Shown one piece after another: positions 1,096-8,389 of a DNA stretch of 64,000 bases (the stretch's first letter is position 1; every line of letters begins with the position of its first letter). Below the pieces are notes generated by a model. It ran no database searches, had not been told where the DNA came from, and was given only the letters and a program-made list of their open reading frames with translations. The stretch is from NCBI GenBank assembly GCA_904063045.1, contig CAJFCJ010000002.1, positions 186,001 through 250,000 of the forward strand, written 5' to 3'. The position numbers were made by a program, and so were the translations under genes. This DNA comes from Dimorphilus gyrociliatus. Lineage: Eukaryota; Animalia; Annelida.

Positions 1096-2148
1096 ATGTT
1101 ATTTAGTCCTCTTTCACCAAACATCAGTAAAAGTGCTTTAACATCGATAAGAAGACGACTATCAAATGCTTCCCCGCGTATTTGTCCAACACCTCCTAGA
1201 CGGAGCTCTTTGGCTATTAATTCAATTATATATCAAAATAGGGGGCCGTCTGCTAATTTAACAACACCTACTTCTCCTGCTGTATTTAATTTCAACGAAT
1301 TGCCTAGAAAGTCAGTTACAGAGATTACCAATAGTCCTTTAAGTGCAATAAAAAATAGGCGACCTTCTATTAGATTAGAGAAACTCATTGGTGCAGGAGG
1401 ATTTGGAAAAGTGTACGCAGGAAGATGGAATGGACGGAAAGTAGCCATTAAGAAATTAAAGAAGAAGACAGCTAGAGATGAATGTATAACATCGGAAGAG
1501 TACGCTCTAAATTTTTCACACCCAAATATTGTTCGTGTATTTTGGGTAGATACAATTGATAGCTGTGAAGCAGAAACTATAATTGTTATGGAATATGCAG
1601 GAAGAAAGAATTTGCAACATATAATTGACAATTACGACGAAGTATTACCTATGAATACAAGAATAAGATATCTGACTGACTTACTGAAAGCTCTTGAATA
1701 CATGCATTCTAAAGACTTTGTTCATTTAGATGTTAAACCAGCCAATATTATTATTGATTCAGTAACAGATACTTGTAAATTGGGAGATTTTGGTTGTGTA
1801 CAAAAGCTGGGAGATTCTCACTCAGTGGAGAGTAATGTTGTTGGTACTTATGCCTACAGGGCACCAGAACTTTTTAGAGGTCAATATCCTTCTGATAAGT
1901 CTGATATATACTCTACGGGCATAAGCATGTGGCAAATGAAAGAGAGGAGAGTACCTTACGAAAATGTACATCATCATATAATAGCATTTAAAGTTGTATC
2001 TCAAAATCGAAGACCATCTATTCGACTGTTAGACTCCTCCGAAGAAGAATCCATATACAAAGACATTTTTACACAATGTTGGCAAGGAGACCCAAAAAGT
2101 AGACCGTCTGCTAAAGGTTTATTAGATGTTTTATCCCATATAAATTAG
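1096..2148 (+). CDS. MOS: Mos serine/threonine kinase, intronless, 350 aa
   Basis: LIGAGGFGKVY, VAIK, HPNIVRV, IVMEY, HLDVKPANI, KLGDFGC, GTYAYRAPEL and DIYSTGISMWQM follow Mos-specific wording. Mos genes are typically intronless. Confidence 0.85.
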   Translation: MLFSPLSPNISKSALTSIRRRLSNASPRICPTPPRRSSLAINSIIYQNRGPSANLTTPTSPAVFNFNELPRKSVTEITNSPLSAIKNRRPSIRLEKLIGAGGFGKVYAGRWNGRKVAIKKLKKKTARDECITSEEYALNFSHPNIVRVFWVDTIDSCEAETIIVMEYAGRKNLQHIIDNYDEVLPMNTRIRYLTDLLKALEYMHSKDFVHLDVKPANIIIDSVTDTCKLGDFGCVQKLGDSHSVESNVVGTYAYRAPELFRGQYPSDKSDIYSTGISMWQMKERRVPYENVHHHIIAFKVVSQNRRPSIRLLDSSEEESIYKDIFTQCWQGDPKSRPSAKGLLDVLSHIN

Positions 2149-2430
2149 TGACGTTTTGTAGATTTTTCCTAGTTGTGCCATGTTGATATTATTTGTTTTA
2201 TTGAAAGGTTTTAGATTTTTACAATTTCAAGGAAAAAATATAACATTTTTATAGATTGCTCTTTATCAATTCAATTTTTATCGCCAGAGAAAGAGAATTA
2301 AGCATTTTACCATTGATATTCCACCTTTAATGCAAATCCATACTCTGATTTTTTATAAGAATATTTAAAAATATAGGCTTACCAAGAATCAATTAATCCG
2401 CATAGCAACAGCAAACAATTAGAATCAAAA

Positions 2431-4756
2431 ATGTCATCGAAGTTCTTACCTCCGGTTGCTTTTCGGTTTTATGATAGTAGTAGATGGACCAAATCAAGTT
2501 TGGATAATTGGTCAGATATTCAACTGCAAAATTTACTAAAATTGAAAATAAATCGAGTTGCTATTGTTCAACAATTGAAAGTAGAGCACATTTTAGATTA
2601 TTTACATGACGAGGGTGTGCTAACGAGGAGAGAATGTGATTTTATTATTGGCTGCGAAAACCCAACGGACAGGGCACGGATTCTTGTTGATATTTTACCC
2701 ACAAAAACAGGTCAATGTGATTGGTACAAATTATTTAAGAAGTCTTTAATGAATCCGGATACCGATTCAGAGGATATAAAGAAGCAATACAGGATGCTAA
2801 TTGATTTTATGGAGAATACTCTATTACCTGAGCAATTACAAGTCGAAACGGAAAGACGAGGAAGTGATGCTGGAAGATTACCTTACTACAGGCCTATACC
2901 AGGTATAAGTAAATTCTGGACTGGGACGAAAGAAGCTCCTCGAACTTCAGAGACGGATGAAGAGAATGGCCGCAGTGGACGAAGAAAGAAAAAATGTTCT
3001 TTTACATTAGTAGATTTAGACGAAGCAAATGTGATATTTCCGGCCTGGTACCAATCAAAATTAACTGAGTCGGATAGACTCTTCAATCAACTGTCTCAGT
3101 CAAAAAAAGAGGAAGATAAAAAGCAGTTAAGTAGAGAAGAAACTGCATTGGAAACTATGAAAAAACTGGAATTTCTTTTTACGCTACAAAATGATGATCT
3201 ATTAACAGATGAATTTGAATTATGTTTATCCAACTTTTTCCATAAATTTGTTACGGATACTCATTACATTCCTGCATATTTAAAATATTTACACTCTCTT
3301 AAAGATTCAAATTCCATTGATATTATTGATGAAGTCTCTTCAAGAATGATAGAAATATTGAATGAACCTAAAACGAAGACTGAACGAGATTTGATCAAAA
3401 TTTTTGAAATTGTACTTGGTCTAGCAGATATCTTACTAGAAATGGGTAATGAAAACAAAGCCGAAAATCTCTTAAGAGCAGCTAAGAATCTAACAAATCC
3501 GGATGTAGTTTGGTATTATAGATTGGACGCTGTACTCATAAAAATCCACATAGACAGGGCTGAATTTAATGAAGCTAGGGCTTTAATTCAAGAATCTCCA
3601 AAGTTTGAGAAGAGCGCAATTTATGTACAAACAGCGAGGTTGAACAGAGAAGAAGGTAACCTAGAGGCCGCATTGGAATACAGTAAAAAAGCGTTAGAAG
3701 AAGCTGCTGGTGAAGAAACGTTTAAAACAGAAGATTCTATAAATGCAAAAATTGAGATGTCATTGACGGAAGCCTTAATGTGGAGGTTGAAAGACGCAGA
3801 AGAAACATCTCAAAATGCTTTTTTGGTTGCAGAAGCTAATTATGGAAAACGTCATCCAATCTTTTATAGAGCATGTTTGAACTATTTTGAAATTTTGAAG
3901 CAATTTAACAACGATATTGAATTATATAAACTCACAAAAAGACTTTTATACAGTGTTGAAACGTGTTATGATTCAGGTCTTTCTTTATTAGTAGCTGATG
4001 TTAACCGATTAATGGCAAGCATCATGATTGCCCTACAACAGGATCAATCCAAGTGAGTAAATTGTAAAGTATTATACAAGAGCAAACTTTTTATTCTTCA
4101 CTAGATGGTACAATTGTGCAACGAAAGCTGTAGAAACGGCTCAGGAACTTTATCCACCAAATCATCCTAAAATAGCATACTTTCGTGCTACACTTGCTCA
4201 ATGTCTTTACTGTGTGGGCCGTTTAGAAAACAAAAAGGAAGAACTTACATGGGCCGAAAAAGAAGCGTCTACGGTTCTGGAAATGTACCGGCTACATTGG
4301 GGTGAAGAGAGCATTAAAACAGCTTTAGCAACAGCCCTCCTAGCTCAAATTCAAACGAAATTAGGAAAGTAAGTGTGAACTATAAAGAGTTCATAATTTG
4401 CATCTAAACATGCTTAATTCCTTAGGACTGATGAAGCAAGAGCTGCTCTCGAAGTTATTGAACAACGTCACTCAAGTACATATTTACAAGTATTAATTGG
4501 TTCATTCTACAACGAAATATCCGCTCCAGTTGAAGCTATTAATATACTCAGAAAAGCTTTGCAACCTCCGCCATACACTCAAAAAGTTTTCTTGAAATGG
4601 ATTAGTAAAGCATTTGAATTGCTTAACGCACTTTTACACGCTTGTGGTAATATACAAGGAGCCTACGAAATCGAGTCAGAGTATTCAGACTGGGCAGTGG
4701 CTAACAATGAATTAAACGTTGAATGGGCAACGGTGTTTATCATTTGCGGAAAATAA
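2431..4756 (+). CDS. N-terminal CARD fused to an APPBP2-like TPR solenoid; 3 exons (2431-4052, 4105-4368, 4426-4756)
   Basis: CARD pattern LKINRVAIVQQLKVEHILDYLHDEGVLTRRE...DRARILVDILPTK. GT-AG introns of 52 and 57 nt join the frames. TPR repeats with GKRHP, PPNHPKIA and GEESIKTA signatures are collinear with APPBP2 as recalled. Confidence 0.75.
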
Positions 4757-5142: not shown

Positions 5143-8100
5143 TTAATTGCCATGTCCCGCCTTAATTTTGTTATAAATAGAAAGTAGGAGTTTTGCAAGC
5201 ATGCTGAAAACAAGTCCTACTCCAAGCAATAAAGGTAGAGCAGCTATAATTATGAGTTCTATGGTATCGAAAATAAGGACTCTGGTGTTGTTAGGTCCAG
5301 AGGGTTGAACGCCAGAAGCAATAAAAGTTGCTTCAACCATATGCATTATGCCTATTATCAACAAACCAGAAAGTCCGGCCGTTTCTAAATTCTGTGCAGA
5401 CTTTGCAGCAAAGGGTCGAAAGTGAAGATGCCATAGCAAAAATGCAAGGGAGGCGAGGGTCTGACATGTAGTGCAAGATAAGGGATCCTGTATAAAAGCT
5501 CTCATAAGTATCACAACAAGACGGCGAAAGACCAAAACACCTTCCCAATACTTGTGTGACTTATCTAAGTCTTCATAACCCTTCTTCAAAAATGGTTCTT
5601 CAACAACAAAGAGACATAGAGCTCTCAATCGTTCTGTTTCATCTAACTCTTCCAGCAAATCTGGTCTGTCTCTAGCTGTTATTGAGATATGGGAGTTTGT
5701 TCGTTGCAAAATATGTTTAAACTCCTTGAAACTGGCATGCTTTATTCCGAAATAAATTAGCATTGGTAACGGGAATAGATACGATAGCATAAACTGCTTT
5801 GGAGTAATAACATCTCTATCAAGTAACATTCTGGAGATTATAACTTGAAGAAAGAATGGTATAACATAAGCGAATGCCATAATTCCAACAAAATATTGCC
5901 ACCACTCTCCACAATTGACATTACCGTCGAAATATAAAACTGCGTTTTCTTGACCAACGTTTGTGCAAGAAAGAAGAGAGAAAATAAGAGTTGACACATT
6001 AACGTAGTTATAAATAATTATATTTAAAGCAGCAATTATCATCCTGATTTTAAAACTTGGCTCTGGGCATAAATCAGGATTGTGATTTTCTTCCAACAAT
6101 AGGTCATTCTCAGCTAATTCCTGAGTGCGTCTTCTTCTCTTTTTCCACAGCACTCTTAGCTTGACAAAAATATATCGCAATAAAACAAATAAAAGTAAGG
6201 CGACTAGAGAGAGAGTTAGCTTGCTATTTGTATATATTAATTTGCCAATACTAGTTAAACCTAAAAAAGGGCAGACTCGTACAAACGCAGCAATCGGTGC
6301 AAAACTCATTATGGTAACAATAACTGGTTGAATATGAGTGCTGATGACAGATTCGGCTCTATTTCTCCAAACAACAACCAAGGGTACTGTCTGATAGAAA
6401 TAGAATATAGATTTTATGTAACCAGCCATTGCTGCATCGTCTGAATGTGTTATTGGAACCCACAGTAGTCTTTGCATTATAAATAGTGTAATTTCCATTT
6501 GATAAGCAAAGAATAAGAAGGAGATAAAAATCGAAATAATTTCAATTATAATGAACCAACTATCAGTACATTTTTCATTTTCTCTGCAATCGGGTGAAAA
6601 TAATACCTCGGACATATCAGCTCTGCATTCTCCACACAATGGACCTACTCTGTTTGGGGCACATTCGTTGTAGCTATCGCATCTTTTTTTAGTGCAACAA
6701 TACGAATCCTGACAATTAATGAACTTAATCTCATTTTTATTCTTTTTCTTAAATCCCCAAAAGTTTTCATTAGCACCCACTTTACCTCGAGAACAAGAAC
6801 CACCATAAGGGCAACTGATGCAATCAGTTGGTGTAATAGTCAAATTTTTACTAGATAGACTTCCAAAAAGAGTTCCTCCGTCTAAACTATATGTTTGATC
6901 TGGACAAGGATCGCAAAAGAGCAAAAAATCCTTATAAACTATAGAAAGTGTTTCGCTTATGAATATTTCAGGTAAGGTATCAGTTCTCAGTTTGGATCCA
7001 ACTGGACAGGAAACTTTTATATCCTGCTCCCCTGTTAGATAGCTATCTCCAGGACTGCTATACCAGATAATTGCAAGATTGTTTGCCGTAGATTTAACTC
7101 TGAAAGTTATATTGGAGAGGATGCAATTACCGCTTAAAAAGAGTATATCTCCTGATGTAGCGTGTTCAAAAGAGTCACCATTTTCAAATTCACTATCTTT
7201 GATTGTTAATTCTCCCTCACCAGCTATTGAACCTCCGAACCAAGTTGCCGTATTGTTAATGAAAATACAATTAGTTATTTTCACTCGACTAGTTATATGA
7301 GCATATATAGCTCCACCAGCTCCCTGTCTCTGTGTTGGGGTAGGGAATGATCCTCTATGTATTAAACCTTTTGAATTCAATCTAACATGATTATTTAAGA
7401 ATTTCGTTTGATCTATTTCAATCTGTGCTCCGTAAACATAAATAGCAGCCGCACTCTCTTGATTAGTATTGTTAATGAATGTCGTTGATTTCACACGAAT
7501 AATAGATTTATCCGATAAATTTAGAGAATCTATTTGCACAACGCTACCAGCTACCACAGCCTTATTCCTTCTAAATATACATTCTTCCAAAAGTAGAATA
7601 AATCTACCTTTTTCCTTATTCTGGATATGTATAATTCCACCCAAACTGCTAGTACTATTTTCAAAGATACTGTTCGTTATACTGATAAAAGCTTGAGAAA
7701 AATCATTATTAAACACCCGAATAACGTTTAAAAGTGCCATAGCCTTCTTTATAACAGTACTTGAAATATTTAAGGAAAGGTGATTATAATTAGCAAAGTC
7801 TAAGAAATTTTGCGTATTTTCAATAGTTGTGTTAATAAAAGAAACGTGGACACTTTTAATAGTATTTTTCGTTTTTATAACAGTTCCAGCTTCAATCATA
7901 GCTGTATCCAGTAATGTTAAGGCTATAGAATTATGCGAACAATTTTCCGAACTATTCCAAAAACAATCGGGTCCTAAGATTACTCGAGAATTCACTAAAA
8001 GACTTTGACGAAGAGTTAATGATGACTTATTCTCATGCGAAAAAATTAATATTGATGAATTAATGAATTTAAGATTATTAGCTTCCAAATGAAAGTCTTT

Positions 8101-8389
8101 TATACATATTCTACAATCCTCAAAAGTGGTTCCAAAATGAGACGTATTTGTATATTGATCGCTTATTATTAAATGGCAAATATCAGGGGCTGAAGGGCAT
8201 TTAATGTTGTTATTTGAAGAGAAACTGCCCGATGACATTTCCAGAAAAGGCGTATATCCATTGTTCTCGAAATTTAAACACTCGACTCCGTAATATAAAA
8301 GGCTCGCTAAATTAAAAATTTACATTTTTACAAAGTAATAAAAGAATAAAAGTTTACAAACCTAGAATTTGTATTATTATAAACTGCAT
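5143..8389 (-). CDS. Signal peptide + PMP-like (FxxN/GGAI) beta-helix repeats + Cys-rich module + ~9-10 TM membrane protein; exons 8389-8362 and 8307-5143
   Basis: A 28-nt first exon and a 54-nt GT-AG intron extend the 1031-aa ORF to give the signal peptide MQFIIIQILASLLYYGVEC. Repeats include FINNT...AAAIYV, FLNN...GAGGAIYA and FINNTATWFGGSI. Cys module CDPCP / CISCPYGGSC / CCxxxxC / NRVGPLCGEC. TM block contains YWEGVLVFRR and RPF...NLE. Confidence 0.8.

What the first reader, a model, noticed from the sequence alone, without database searches (positions are those of the whole stretch)
2431..4756. CARD death-fold fused to an almost complete APPBP2-like TPR solenoid, with no NTPase domain
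Seen: a clear CARD at about aa 30-125, no P-loop anywhere, then TPRs that align block by block with APPBP2 as I recall it. Examples: LGLADILLEMGNENKAENLL vs LGGFLSDAGWYSDAEKVF; KSAIYVQTARL vs KAALYGELCAL; ANYGKRHPIF vs DHFGSKHPKY; LYPPNHPKIA vs ILPEDHLLLA; HWGEESIKTA vs AFGEFNVQTA. Known: APPBP2 is a CRL2 substrate receptor whose TPRs read C-terminal degrons through an N-terminal BC-box. CARDs recruit caspases or NF-kB adaptors and are normally paired with NACHT/NB-ARC or helicase sensors. Inference: the BC-box region appears replaced by a CARD. That would make a sensor that reports exposed C-termini (for example protease products) to caspases, or an adaptor that brings CARD proteins to a ligase. 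Either would be an unusual innate-immune or cell-death module.
Basis: partly seen in the sequence, partly recalled or inferred. Interest (0 to 1): 0.78.

Follow-up and report, generated by a model that had tools for sequence, protein, structure and literature searches.

The report
CARD joined to APPBP2-type repeat protein
This small marine worm makes a protein that joins a cell-death recruiting module (CARD) to a true relative of the APPBP2 repeat coil. The same undescribed design is conserved in molluscs, annelids, brachiopods, ribbon worms and a flatworm, so it is a candidate new link in their cell-death or immune signalling.

Summary
Window 2431-4756 (+) is a transcribed three-exon gene (2431-4052, 4105-4368, 4426-4756) for a 738-aa protein. 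A spliced public contig shows both GT..AG joints and puts the CARD and the repeats on one transcript.

- **CARD:** aa 38-113 pass Pfam CARD (E 8e-12) and model as a confident helix bundle.
- **No NTPase:** there is no P-loop and no NTPase domain.
- **A real family:** the gene belongs to a family of about 800-aa proteins in annelids, molluscs, a brachiopod, a nemertean and a flatworm.
- **APPBP2 homology:** the family profile hits human APPBP2 at E 1e-43 over APPBP2 residues 40-574. The next TPR protein, KLC1, scores 7e-6. A full-length relative's model superposes on APPBP2 at Z 42.7 (next best 23).

The function is less clear:

- APPBP2's N-terminal VHL box has no counterpart.
- The zinc-dimer Cys54 aligns with Pro in relatives and Thr here.
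- Of eight residues shown by mutagenesis to bind the RxxG degron, only Ser479 is kept here.

I read it as an NTPase-free CARD adaptor whose coil binds a different, unknown ligand. That function is inferred, not shown. I found no paper describing it. I could not test whether spiralians also keep a canonical APPBP2.

The parts
2360..2560 (+). Conserved 5' region: about 70 nt upstream of the ATG plus the first ~45 codons, unusually conserved at DNA level
   Evidence: About 93% identical to the ortholog locus L001. The first 27 codons have dS 0.30, while dS is above 1.9 or saturated elsewhere. No Rfam match. The transcript contig starts at 2413.
2431..4052 (+). Exon 1 (aa 1-540 plus 2 nt): CARD, linker, pre-repeat helices and about the first seven repeat pairs
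   Evidence: Open frame; donor GTGAGT at 4053; spliced contig; 71% identical ortholog P0001.
2512..2814 (+). CARD death-fold domain (aa 28-128; Pfam core aa 38-113) with an extra C-terminal helix
   Evidence: Pfam CARD E 8.2e-12. Helices 29-128 with block-mean pLDDT 90-97 from residue 31 to 130. The family profile hits only CARDs among death folds: RAIDD, ICEBERG, cIAP1, Apaf-1, NLRC4, NOD1. dN 0.145 against saturated dS.
2815..3000 (+). Disordered linker (aa 129-190) holding the conserved short motif LPYYRPIPGI (aa 150-159, nt 2878-2907)
   Evidence: Block-mean pLDDT below 60 for residues 131-190; long stretches below 50 at 136-150 and 163-185. The motif phi-P-x-Y-x-P-L-P-x-I is conserved across phyla.
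3001..3165 (+). Pre-repeat helical segment (aa 191-245), specific to the family
   Evidence: Helices 193-198, 215-223 and the start of 227-254. Conserved in the family. Lies upstream of where sequence similarity to APPBP2 begins.
3166..4052 (+). APPBP2-homologous solenoid, N-terminal part (aa 246-540)
   Evidence: The four best Foldseek matches are APPBP2, E 1e-5. VIA Z 19.7, rmsd 3.6 A over 298 residues, model 188-540 to chain 23-348. Family profile to APPBP2 40-574.
4053..4104 (+). Intron 1 (52 nt, GT..AG, phase 2)
   Evidence: Joint 4052>4105 in the spliced contig; same position in L001.
4105..4368 (+). Exon 2: solenoid repeats at the positions of APPBP2's Arg-binding region
   Evidence: hhalign to family profile 560-649, E 1.2e-11. 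Residues at APPBP2 R380, E387, E388, K430, R437 are A, Y, C, L, Q.
4369..4425 (+). Intron 2 (57 nt, GT..AG, phase 2)
   Evidence: Joint 4368>4426 in the spliced contig; same position in L001.
4426..4756 (+). Exon 3: last repeats and stop codon. The protein ends about 45 residues before the end of the family profile.
   Evidence: hhalign to family profile 667-754 of 802, E 2.8e-7. 78% identical in the ortholog. AATAAA lies about 35 nt after the stop.

Best explanation
Shown: this is an expressed, strongly constrained gene of a conserved spiralian family. Each member has an N-terminal CARD, a disordered linker with a conserved phi-P-x-Y-x-P-L-P-x-I motif, and a repeat coil that is a true homolog of the whole APPBP2 solenoid. 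No member has an NTPase.

The coil has lost what makes APPBP2 a CRL2 degron receptor. The VHL-box segment, the zinc-dimer Cys54 and nearly all residues that read the RxxG degron are absent.

Inferred: the protein works as an NTPase-free CARD adaptor. The remodelled groove of the coil binds an extended peptide or protein terminus of a different, unknown specificity. The acidic pair of APPBP2 is Gln-Trp in most relatives and Tyr-Cys here. The CARD couples that binding to other CARD proteins by homotypic contact. Candidate partners are CARD caspases, CRADD, or one of the many other CARD proteins noted in this genome. Whether it activates or restrains them cannot be told from sequence.
For: - Transcript and splicing.
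- CARD.
- Family of about 800-aa CARD plus TPR proteins in Owenia, Lingula, Tubulanus, Lottia, Patella, Babylonia, Physella, Bulinus, Plakobranchus, Tegillarca, Magallana and Macrostomum. In many species the CARD and the first repeats sit in one open frame.
- The family tree keeps known groups together and suggests one gene per species apart from a recent tandem pair in Tegillarca; deeper forks are weakly supported.
- APPBP2 homology: E 1.1e-43, one stretch, APPBP2 40-574. Lingula alone scores 2.5e-20. Foldseek gives 7.5e-18 against 3.3e-6 for the next match. VIA gives Z 42.7, rmsd 3.2 A over 524 residues, against 23.2. In the ESM Atlas the nearest structure is the arthropod APPBP2 cluster, TM 0.77.
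- Purifying selection in every part: dN 0.13-0.28 with saturated dS.
- Loss of APPBP2's functional residues (with PMC10614623 read).
- Context: molluscs, annelids and brachiopods are reported to lack Apaf-1 yet keep CARD caspases (PMC11463336).
Against: - No binding partner of either domain is known, and nothing here tests CARD-CARD contact or ligand binding.
- The residue mapping rests on an alignment at about 20% identity and could be off locally.
- The nearest non-family CARDs sit in varied multi-CARD, Roc-COR and TRIM-like proteins, so no partner is indicated.
- Macrostomum, from a phylum reported to keep Apaf-1, also has a member, so the family's range does not simply complement Apaf-1 loss.
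- The window protein is a fast-evolving, shortened member on a long branch (2.54).
Confidence: 0.5

Rival explanations
1. It is a restraining or decoy CARD protein. The large coil anchors or sequesters the CARD, so that it holds CARD caspases or adaptors inactive, in the manner of CARD-only inhibitors, rather than assembling an activating platform.
For: ICEBERG, a CARD inhibitor, is among the CARDs the family profile matches. No oligomerising NTPase is present, and APPBP2's zinc-dimer ligand Cys54 is lost, so nothing obvious drives the induced proximity that activation needs.
Against: Conservation of the complete 11-repeat coil under strong constraint suggests that a ligand is read, not mere bulk. 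ICEBERG is only one of many similarly weak CARD matches.
Confidence: 0.2
2. It is still a cullin-RING substrate receptor. A cryptic Elongin-binding element lies in the conserved segment just before the coil (TLVxGxxHxW hairpin and following helices), and the CARD brings CARD proteins to the ligase for ubiquitination.
For: One structural alignment reaches back to APPBP2 residue 23 (8jaq_A). The pre-repeat segment is conserved in the family. NCBI names the Lingula and Plakobranchus proteins APPBP2.
Against: No sequence alignment to APPBP2 residues 1-39 in either profile search. The conserved hairpin motif does not fit the BC-box pattern as I know it (own knowledge), and it is degenerate in the window protein. 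Degron-reading residues are lost as well.
Confidence: 0.12
3. It is a transport or scaffold protein unrelated to cell death. APPBP2/PAT1 has also been described as a kinesin-linked cargo adaptor, and here the CARD might serve only for self-association or cargo choice.
For: KLC-type repeats are the next-best sequence match after APPBP2. The PAT1-kinesin link is from my own knowledge and was not tested here.
Against: The KLC similarity is very weak compared with APPBP2 (27.8 against 152.8 bits). CARDs are, as far as known, used in death and immune signalling.
Confidence: 0.08
4. It is an artefact: two neighbouring genes read as one, a pseudogene, or chance TPR similarity.
For: Exon 1 alone gives no APPBP2 hit by sequence, and only weak generic TPR Pfam hits.
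Against: The CARD and the first repeats share one 540-codon open frame. The spliced transcript spans all exons. The ortholog has the same structure and gene neighbours. dN is far below dS. Family-level homology is overwhelming.
Confidence: 0.01

Closest known systems
APPBP2 (PAT1), substrate receptor of the CRL2 ubiquitin ligase that reads RxxG C-degrons (PDB 8JAL, 8JAQ; PMC10614623)
   Same: The whole repeat coil is homologous and in the same order: APPBP2 residues 40-574 by sequence and 36-579 by structure, at about 20% identity, Z 42.7.
   Different: - No VHL box; about 245 residues of CARD, linker and family-specific helices stand in its place.
- Zinc-dimer Cys54 aligns with Pro (Thr in the window).
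- Arg-binding Glu387/Glu388 align with Gln-Trp (Tyr-Cys in the window).
- Arg380, Lys430, Arg437 and His476 are not kept; Tyr345 falls in an APPBP2-only insertion.
Apaf-1 / CED-4 / NLR-type CARD sensors (CARD + STAND NTPase + repeats)
   Same: N-terminal CARD followed by a large repeat domain that could read a ligand. The CARD matches the Apaf-1 CARD weakly.
   Different: No NB-ARC or NACHT domain and no P-loop, so there is no nucleotide-driven oligomerisation. The repeats are APPBP2-type TPRs, not WD40 or LRR.
CRADD/RAIDD and other small CARD adaptors
   Same: A CARD used as an adaptor without an enzyme domain. RAIDD is the best single CARD match.
   Different: The second module is a 500-residue solenoid instead of a death domain.
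Kinesin light chain TPR domain
   Same: TPR_12-type repeats; second-best sequence match.
   Different: 27.8 bits over about 170 residues, against 152.8 bits over about 530 for APPBP2. Not the family.

Membership tests
APPBP2 (CRL2 substrate receptor) | Repeat coil homologous to APPBP2 TPR1-11 over its whole length | tested here: met
   Family profile E 1.1e-43, APPBP2 40-574. Owenia model Z 42.7, rmsd 3.2 A over 524 residues. Window exon 1 model: best Foldseek and VIA match is APPBP2. Exons 2 and 3 align in order with the family.
APPBP2 (CRL2 substrate receptor) | N-terminal VHL box (helices 1-3) that binds Elongin B/C and Cul2 | tested here: not met
   HMMER alignments start at APPBP2 residue 40 (envelope 34) in both profile searches. 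Structural alignments start at residue 23 or 36. CARD and linker occupy the N-terminus. Binding itself was not testable.
APPBP2 (CRL2 substrate receptor) | Residues shown by mutagenesis to bind the RxxG degron: Y345, R380, E387, E388, K430, R437, H476, S479 | tested here: not met
   The window has A, Y, C, L, Q, L, S at R380, E387, E388, K430, R437, H476, S479, so only S479 is kept. Y345 lies in an APPBP2-only insertion. The eight mollusc, brachiopod and Owenia members shown have Q at E387, W or C at E388 and Q at K430, and all but one have T at S479 (residues from PMC10614623).
APPBP2 (CRL2 substrate receptor) | Zinc-mediated dimer through Cys54 and His89 | tested here: not met
   Cys54 aligns with Pro in all 11 full-length relatives and with Thr in the window. 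His89 aligns with variable residues (PMC10614623).
CARD (death-fold superfamily) | Sequence match to the CARD profile above the curated cut-off | tested here: met
   PF00619 E 8.2e-12, 45.4 bits against 23.9. Seven of the eight relatives scanned also pass it.
CARD (death-fold superfamily) | Compact six-helix bundle | tested here: met
   Model helices 29-40, 42-48, 55-60, 66-74, 78-92, 98-107, plus an extra helix 114-128, with block-mean pLDDT 90-97 from residue 31 to 130. The same is seen in Owenia. No fold search of the domain alone was run.
CARD (death-fold superfamily) | Homotypic binding to another CARD | not testable with these tools
   Needs binding assays or complex prediction.
STAND / NLR / Apaf-1-like sensors | Central NB-ARC or NACHT P-loop NTPase | tested here: not met
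   No such Pfam family in the window pieces or in eight relatives. No Walker A pattern. The models show only CARD, disordered linker and helical coil.
Kinesin light chain | Best repeat similarity to the KLC TPR domain | tested here: not met
   KLC1 E 7.3e-6, 27.8 bits, against 152.8 bits for APPBP2. Z 19.9 against 42.7.

The most novel reading that the evidence does not exclude
This family is the Apaf-1-independent platform, or a key regulator, for CARD caspases in molluscs, annelids and brachiopods, which are reported to have lost Apaf-1. A remodelled APPBP2-type groove would sense a protein terminus or cleavage product, and the CARD would pass the signal to caspase-2 or caspase-Y without any NTPase.
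Probability: 0.12. Interest if true: 0.9.

Novelty: new variant of a known kind. Interest (0 to 1): 0.65.

Why it matters
CARDs are normally attached to NTPase sensors, kinases, caspases or other death folds. A CARD joined to a degron-reader-type coil, conserved across at least five spiralian phyla, is an architecture I could not find in any paper. The proteins themselves sit in public databases under automatic names.

It shows how a ubiquitin-ligase receptor fold was re-used: the ligase-docking end is gone and a death-fold module stands at the N-terminus.

It also gives a concrete candidate for an open question raised for these animals, namely how CARD caspases are controlled where Apaf-1 is missing (PMC11463336). 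Both ends are easy to test by pull-down and peptide binding.

Tried and rejected
- **Word-index searches** returned only one and four true relatives. They missed known family members and fetched no canonical APPBP2, so they say nothing about one.
- **Exon 1 alone against PDB sequences** gave no APPBP2 hit. The link needs the family profile or structure.
- **ESM Atlas feature searches** and the Atlas shape search with the 843-residue model gave only generic TPR clusters. Only the Atlas's own Lingula model pointed to APPBP2.
- **A possible surviving Cul2 box.** I considered that the family motif P-[ED]-N-[FYW] before the coil might be one. I rejected it because it lies about 40 residues upstream of the first aligned helix, whereas in APPBP2 (N-terminus recalled from memory, so unreliable) the similar motif directly abuts that helix. 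HMMER does not align it either.
- **Neighbour link.** The upstream TAK1/MLK-like kinase is a separate transcript. Adjacency in a compact genome is no evidence of a shared pathway.
- **Rfam** on the conserved 5' region gave nothing.
- **The third word-index search** was not spent. At about 20% identity it could not be expected to retrieve canonical APPBP2.

Full report
**What is in the window**

The region 2431-4756 on the + strand holds one gene of three exons: 2431-4052, 4105-4368 and 4426-4756. Both introns are GT..AG and in phase 2, and the stop is TAA. The product is 738 aa.

A contig of public run X3 begins at 2413 and carries exactly the joints 4052>4105 and 4368>4426. It runs on past the stop. 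Because both introns are cut out, it must derive from spliced RNA. This puts the CARD and the repeats on one transcript.

The upstream kinase gene (1096-2148) lies on a separate contig, and nothing covers 2178-2412. Each was searched by reference.

**Domains of the window protein**

- *CARD.* Pfam finds a CARD at aa 38-113 (E 8.2e-12, 45.4 bits against a cut-off of 23.9). The TPR hits are weak and generic.
- *No NTPase.* There is no NTPase family and no Walker A pattern in any exon.
- *Model of exon 1.* AlphaFold2 with a 32-row alignment gave mean pLDDT 84.7. It shows a helix bundle at 29-128, a disordered stretch at about 131-190, and a continuous helical coil from about 190 to 540.

**Relatives**

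The word-index search found a single relative, P0001. It is 71% identical and lies on a Logan contig with the same three exons and the same neighbours: the kinase upstream and a roughly 1,040-aa membrane protein downstream on the opposite strand.

The exhaustive HMM search with the two sequences found 105 proteins at E <= 0.001, 20 of them at E <= 1e-30. The full-length ones are 790-860 aa and have the same layout. By their source names they come from these species:

| Group | Species |
|---|---|
| Annelid | Owenia fusiformis |
| Brachiopod | Lingula anatina |
| Nemertean | Tubulanus polymorphus |
| Gastropods | Lottia, Patella (two species), Babylonia, Physella, Bulinus, Plakobranchus |
| Bivalves | Tegillarca, Magallana gigas |
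| Flatworm | Macrostomum lignano |

NCBI already calls the Lingula and Plakobranchus proteins "amyloid protein-binding protein 2". The others are "uncharacterized" or "CARD domain-containing".

Many shorter hits are single open frames holding the CARD, the linker and the first repeats. The fusion is therefore not an annotation artefact. A maximum-likelihood tree keeps known groups together, though the deeper forks are weakly supported. It puts the two dinophilid sequences on a very long branch.

Exons 2 and 3 of the window align in order with the family's C-terminal repeats (E 1.2e-11 and 2.8e-7). The window protein ends about 45 residues before the end of the family profile.

**Is the coil APPBP2-like?**

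Yes, at family level, and by a wide margin.

| Test | APPBP2 | Next best |
|---|---|---|
| Family profile against PDB sequences | E 1.1e-43, 152.8 bits, one stretch, profile 246-776 to APPBP2 40-574 of 585 | KLC1, E 7.3e-6, 27.8 bits |
| Lingula protein alone | E 2.5e-20 | CARDs only (Apaf-1, E 1.9e-3); no other TPR protein at E <= 1 |
| Owenia model (pLDDT 84.2, pTM 0.72), Foldseek | E 7.5e-18, TM 0.80 by target | E 3.3e-6 |
| Owenia model, VIA-align | Z 42.7, rmsd 3.2 A, 524 residues, 20% identity | Z 23.2 |
| ESM Atlas, its own Lingula model | arthropod APPBP2 cluster, TM 0.77 | TM 0.69 |
| Window exon 1 model, Foldseek | four best matches, E about 1e-5 | E 1.9e-4 |
| Window exon 1 model, VIA-align | Z 19.7 | Z 18.8 (within the tool's tie margin) |

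For the window protein alone the structural evidence is only suggestive. Sequence alone shows nothing. Its APPBP2 kinship rests on its firm membership of the family.

**What of APPBP2's function is kept?**

According to PMC10614623, APPBP2 has these functional parts:

- an N-terminal VHL box (helices 1-3) for Elongin B/C and Cul2;
- a zinc-mediated dimer through Cys54 and His89;
- a deep pocket in TPR6-11, where mutation of Y345, R380, E387, E388, K430, R437, H476 or S479 weakens or abolishes RxxG binding.

Both profile searches align APPBP2 only from residue 40, and the structural alignments start at residue 23 or 36. The VHL-box segment therefore has no counterpart. In its place stand the CARD, the linker and about 55 residues of family-specific structure.

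I mapped the profile positions onto each sequence:

| APPBP2 residue | Most relatives | Window protein |
|---|---|---|
| Cys54 | Pro (all 11 full-length relatives) | Thr |
| Glu387 / Glu388 | Gln / Trp | Tyr / Cys |
| Arg380 | mostly His | Ala |
| Lys430 | Gln | Leu |
| Arg437 | Gln | Gln |
| His476 | Thr | Leu |
| Ser479 | Thr | Ser |
| Tyr345 | in an APPBP2-only insertion | in an APPBP2-only insertion |

The fold is kept, but the ligase docking site, the dimer site and the degron-reading chemistry are not. The positions that replace them are themselves conserved within the family (for example Leu-Gln-Trp-Lys). This suggests a groove that binds something else.

**Constraint**

Between the window and its ortholog, synonymous sites are saturated (pS 0.69-0.95 outside the first 27 codons). 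Over the same parts dN is 0.13-0.28, in the CARD, linker, pre-repeat segment and repeats alike. The protein is under purifying selection along its whole length.

**Most likely working**

*Shown:* a transcribed, constrained member of a spiralian family with a CARD, a linker and an APPBP2-type coil, without an NTPase.

*Inferred:* it is a CARD adaptor. Its coil binds an extended peptide or protein end of unknown kind, and its CARD couples this to other CARD proteins. The direction of the effect, activation or restraint, is open.

Two pieces of context make the idea worth testing:

- Molluscs, annelids and brachiopods are reported to lack Apaf-1 while keeping CARD caspases, including a clade-specific one. 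That paper does not mention this family (PMC11463336).
- Earlier notes of this scan list several other CARD genes in this genome. These notes are unchecked leads.

Against a simple "Apaf-1 substitute" reading, a flatworm also has a member, and flatworms are reported to keep Apaf-1.

The rivals are a decoy or inhibitor role, a surviving ligase receptor with a cryptic docking site, and a transport scaffold. They are scored separately. An artefact is excluded.

**Novelty**

In the held library I found no paper that links a CARD with APPBP2 or with TPRs in this way. The sequences are public but carry only automatic names. I rate it a new variant of a known kind: a death-fold adaptor with a new partner module, or equally an APPBP2 homolog with a swapped N-terminus.

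**Limits**

- I could not establish whether spiralians also have a canonical APPBP2, because no reference sequence was available and the word index did not retrieve one. Paralog and rebuilt ortholog both remain open.
- The joined 738-aa protein was not searched or folded. Full-length structure comes from the Owenia relative.
- The species name Dimorphilus gyrociliatus comes from earlier scan notes and was not checked here.

Noticed in passing
window 2360-2560; L001 about 7930-8130: About 70 nt upstream of the start codon and the first ~45 codons are about 93% identical at DNA level between the two species, while synonymous sites in the rest of the gene are saturated (first 27 codons dS 0.30). 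No Rfam match. This may be a promoter, 5'UTR or translation-control element.
   Followed up: partly
window 1096-2148 (+): Single-exon gene for a 350-aa TKL/MAP3K-like kinase (best solved relatives TAK1, ZAK, DLK at about 1e-31 to 1e-28). It has its own transcript and lies in the same position in the related species.
   Followed up: partly
window 2878-2907 (aa 150-159); all family members: A short linker motif, phi-P-x-Y-x-P-L-P-x-I, is conserved from flat disordered surroundings across the aligned members from four phyla (annelids, molluscs, brachiopod, nemertean). It looks like a docking site for an unknown partner; in some members it reads LPxY, like a WW-domain ligand.
   Followed up: no
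P0035 (Macrostomum lignano, 1063 aa): The flatworm member carries a Ras/Roc-type GTPase domain after the APPBP2-like repeats. Whether this is a real fusion or two merged gene models was not checked.
   Followed up: no
P0003 residues 241-253 (Owenia model): A conserved beta-hairpin motif (TLVxGxxHxWxPxPxNF) precedes the coil in most members. It is degenerate in the window protein.
   Followed up: no
window 1245-2071 and 3641-3836, run X1: A coral-sample metatranscriptome holds contigs over 99% identical to the kinase and to part of this gene, so this worm or a near-identical strain was present in that sample. A marine metatranscriptome (X2) holds 90-95% identical pieces of a related strain or species.
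   Followed up: no
P0114 and P0122 (Tegillarca granosa): Two loci a few genes apart encode proteins that fall in one 90%-identity cluster, one of them without the CARD. This is a recent tandem duplicate or a truncated model.
   Followed up: no
window 5143-8238 (-): The downstream convergent gene encodes a 1,031-aa multi-pass membrane protein with only a weak Chlamydia-PMP repeat hit. Its transcript overlaps or abuts the 3' end of this gene in the assembled contig. Another note of the scan already covers it.
   Followed up: no
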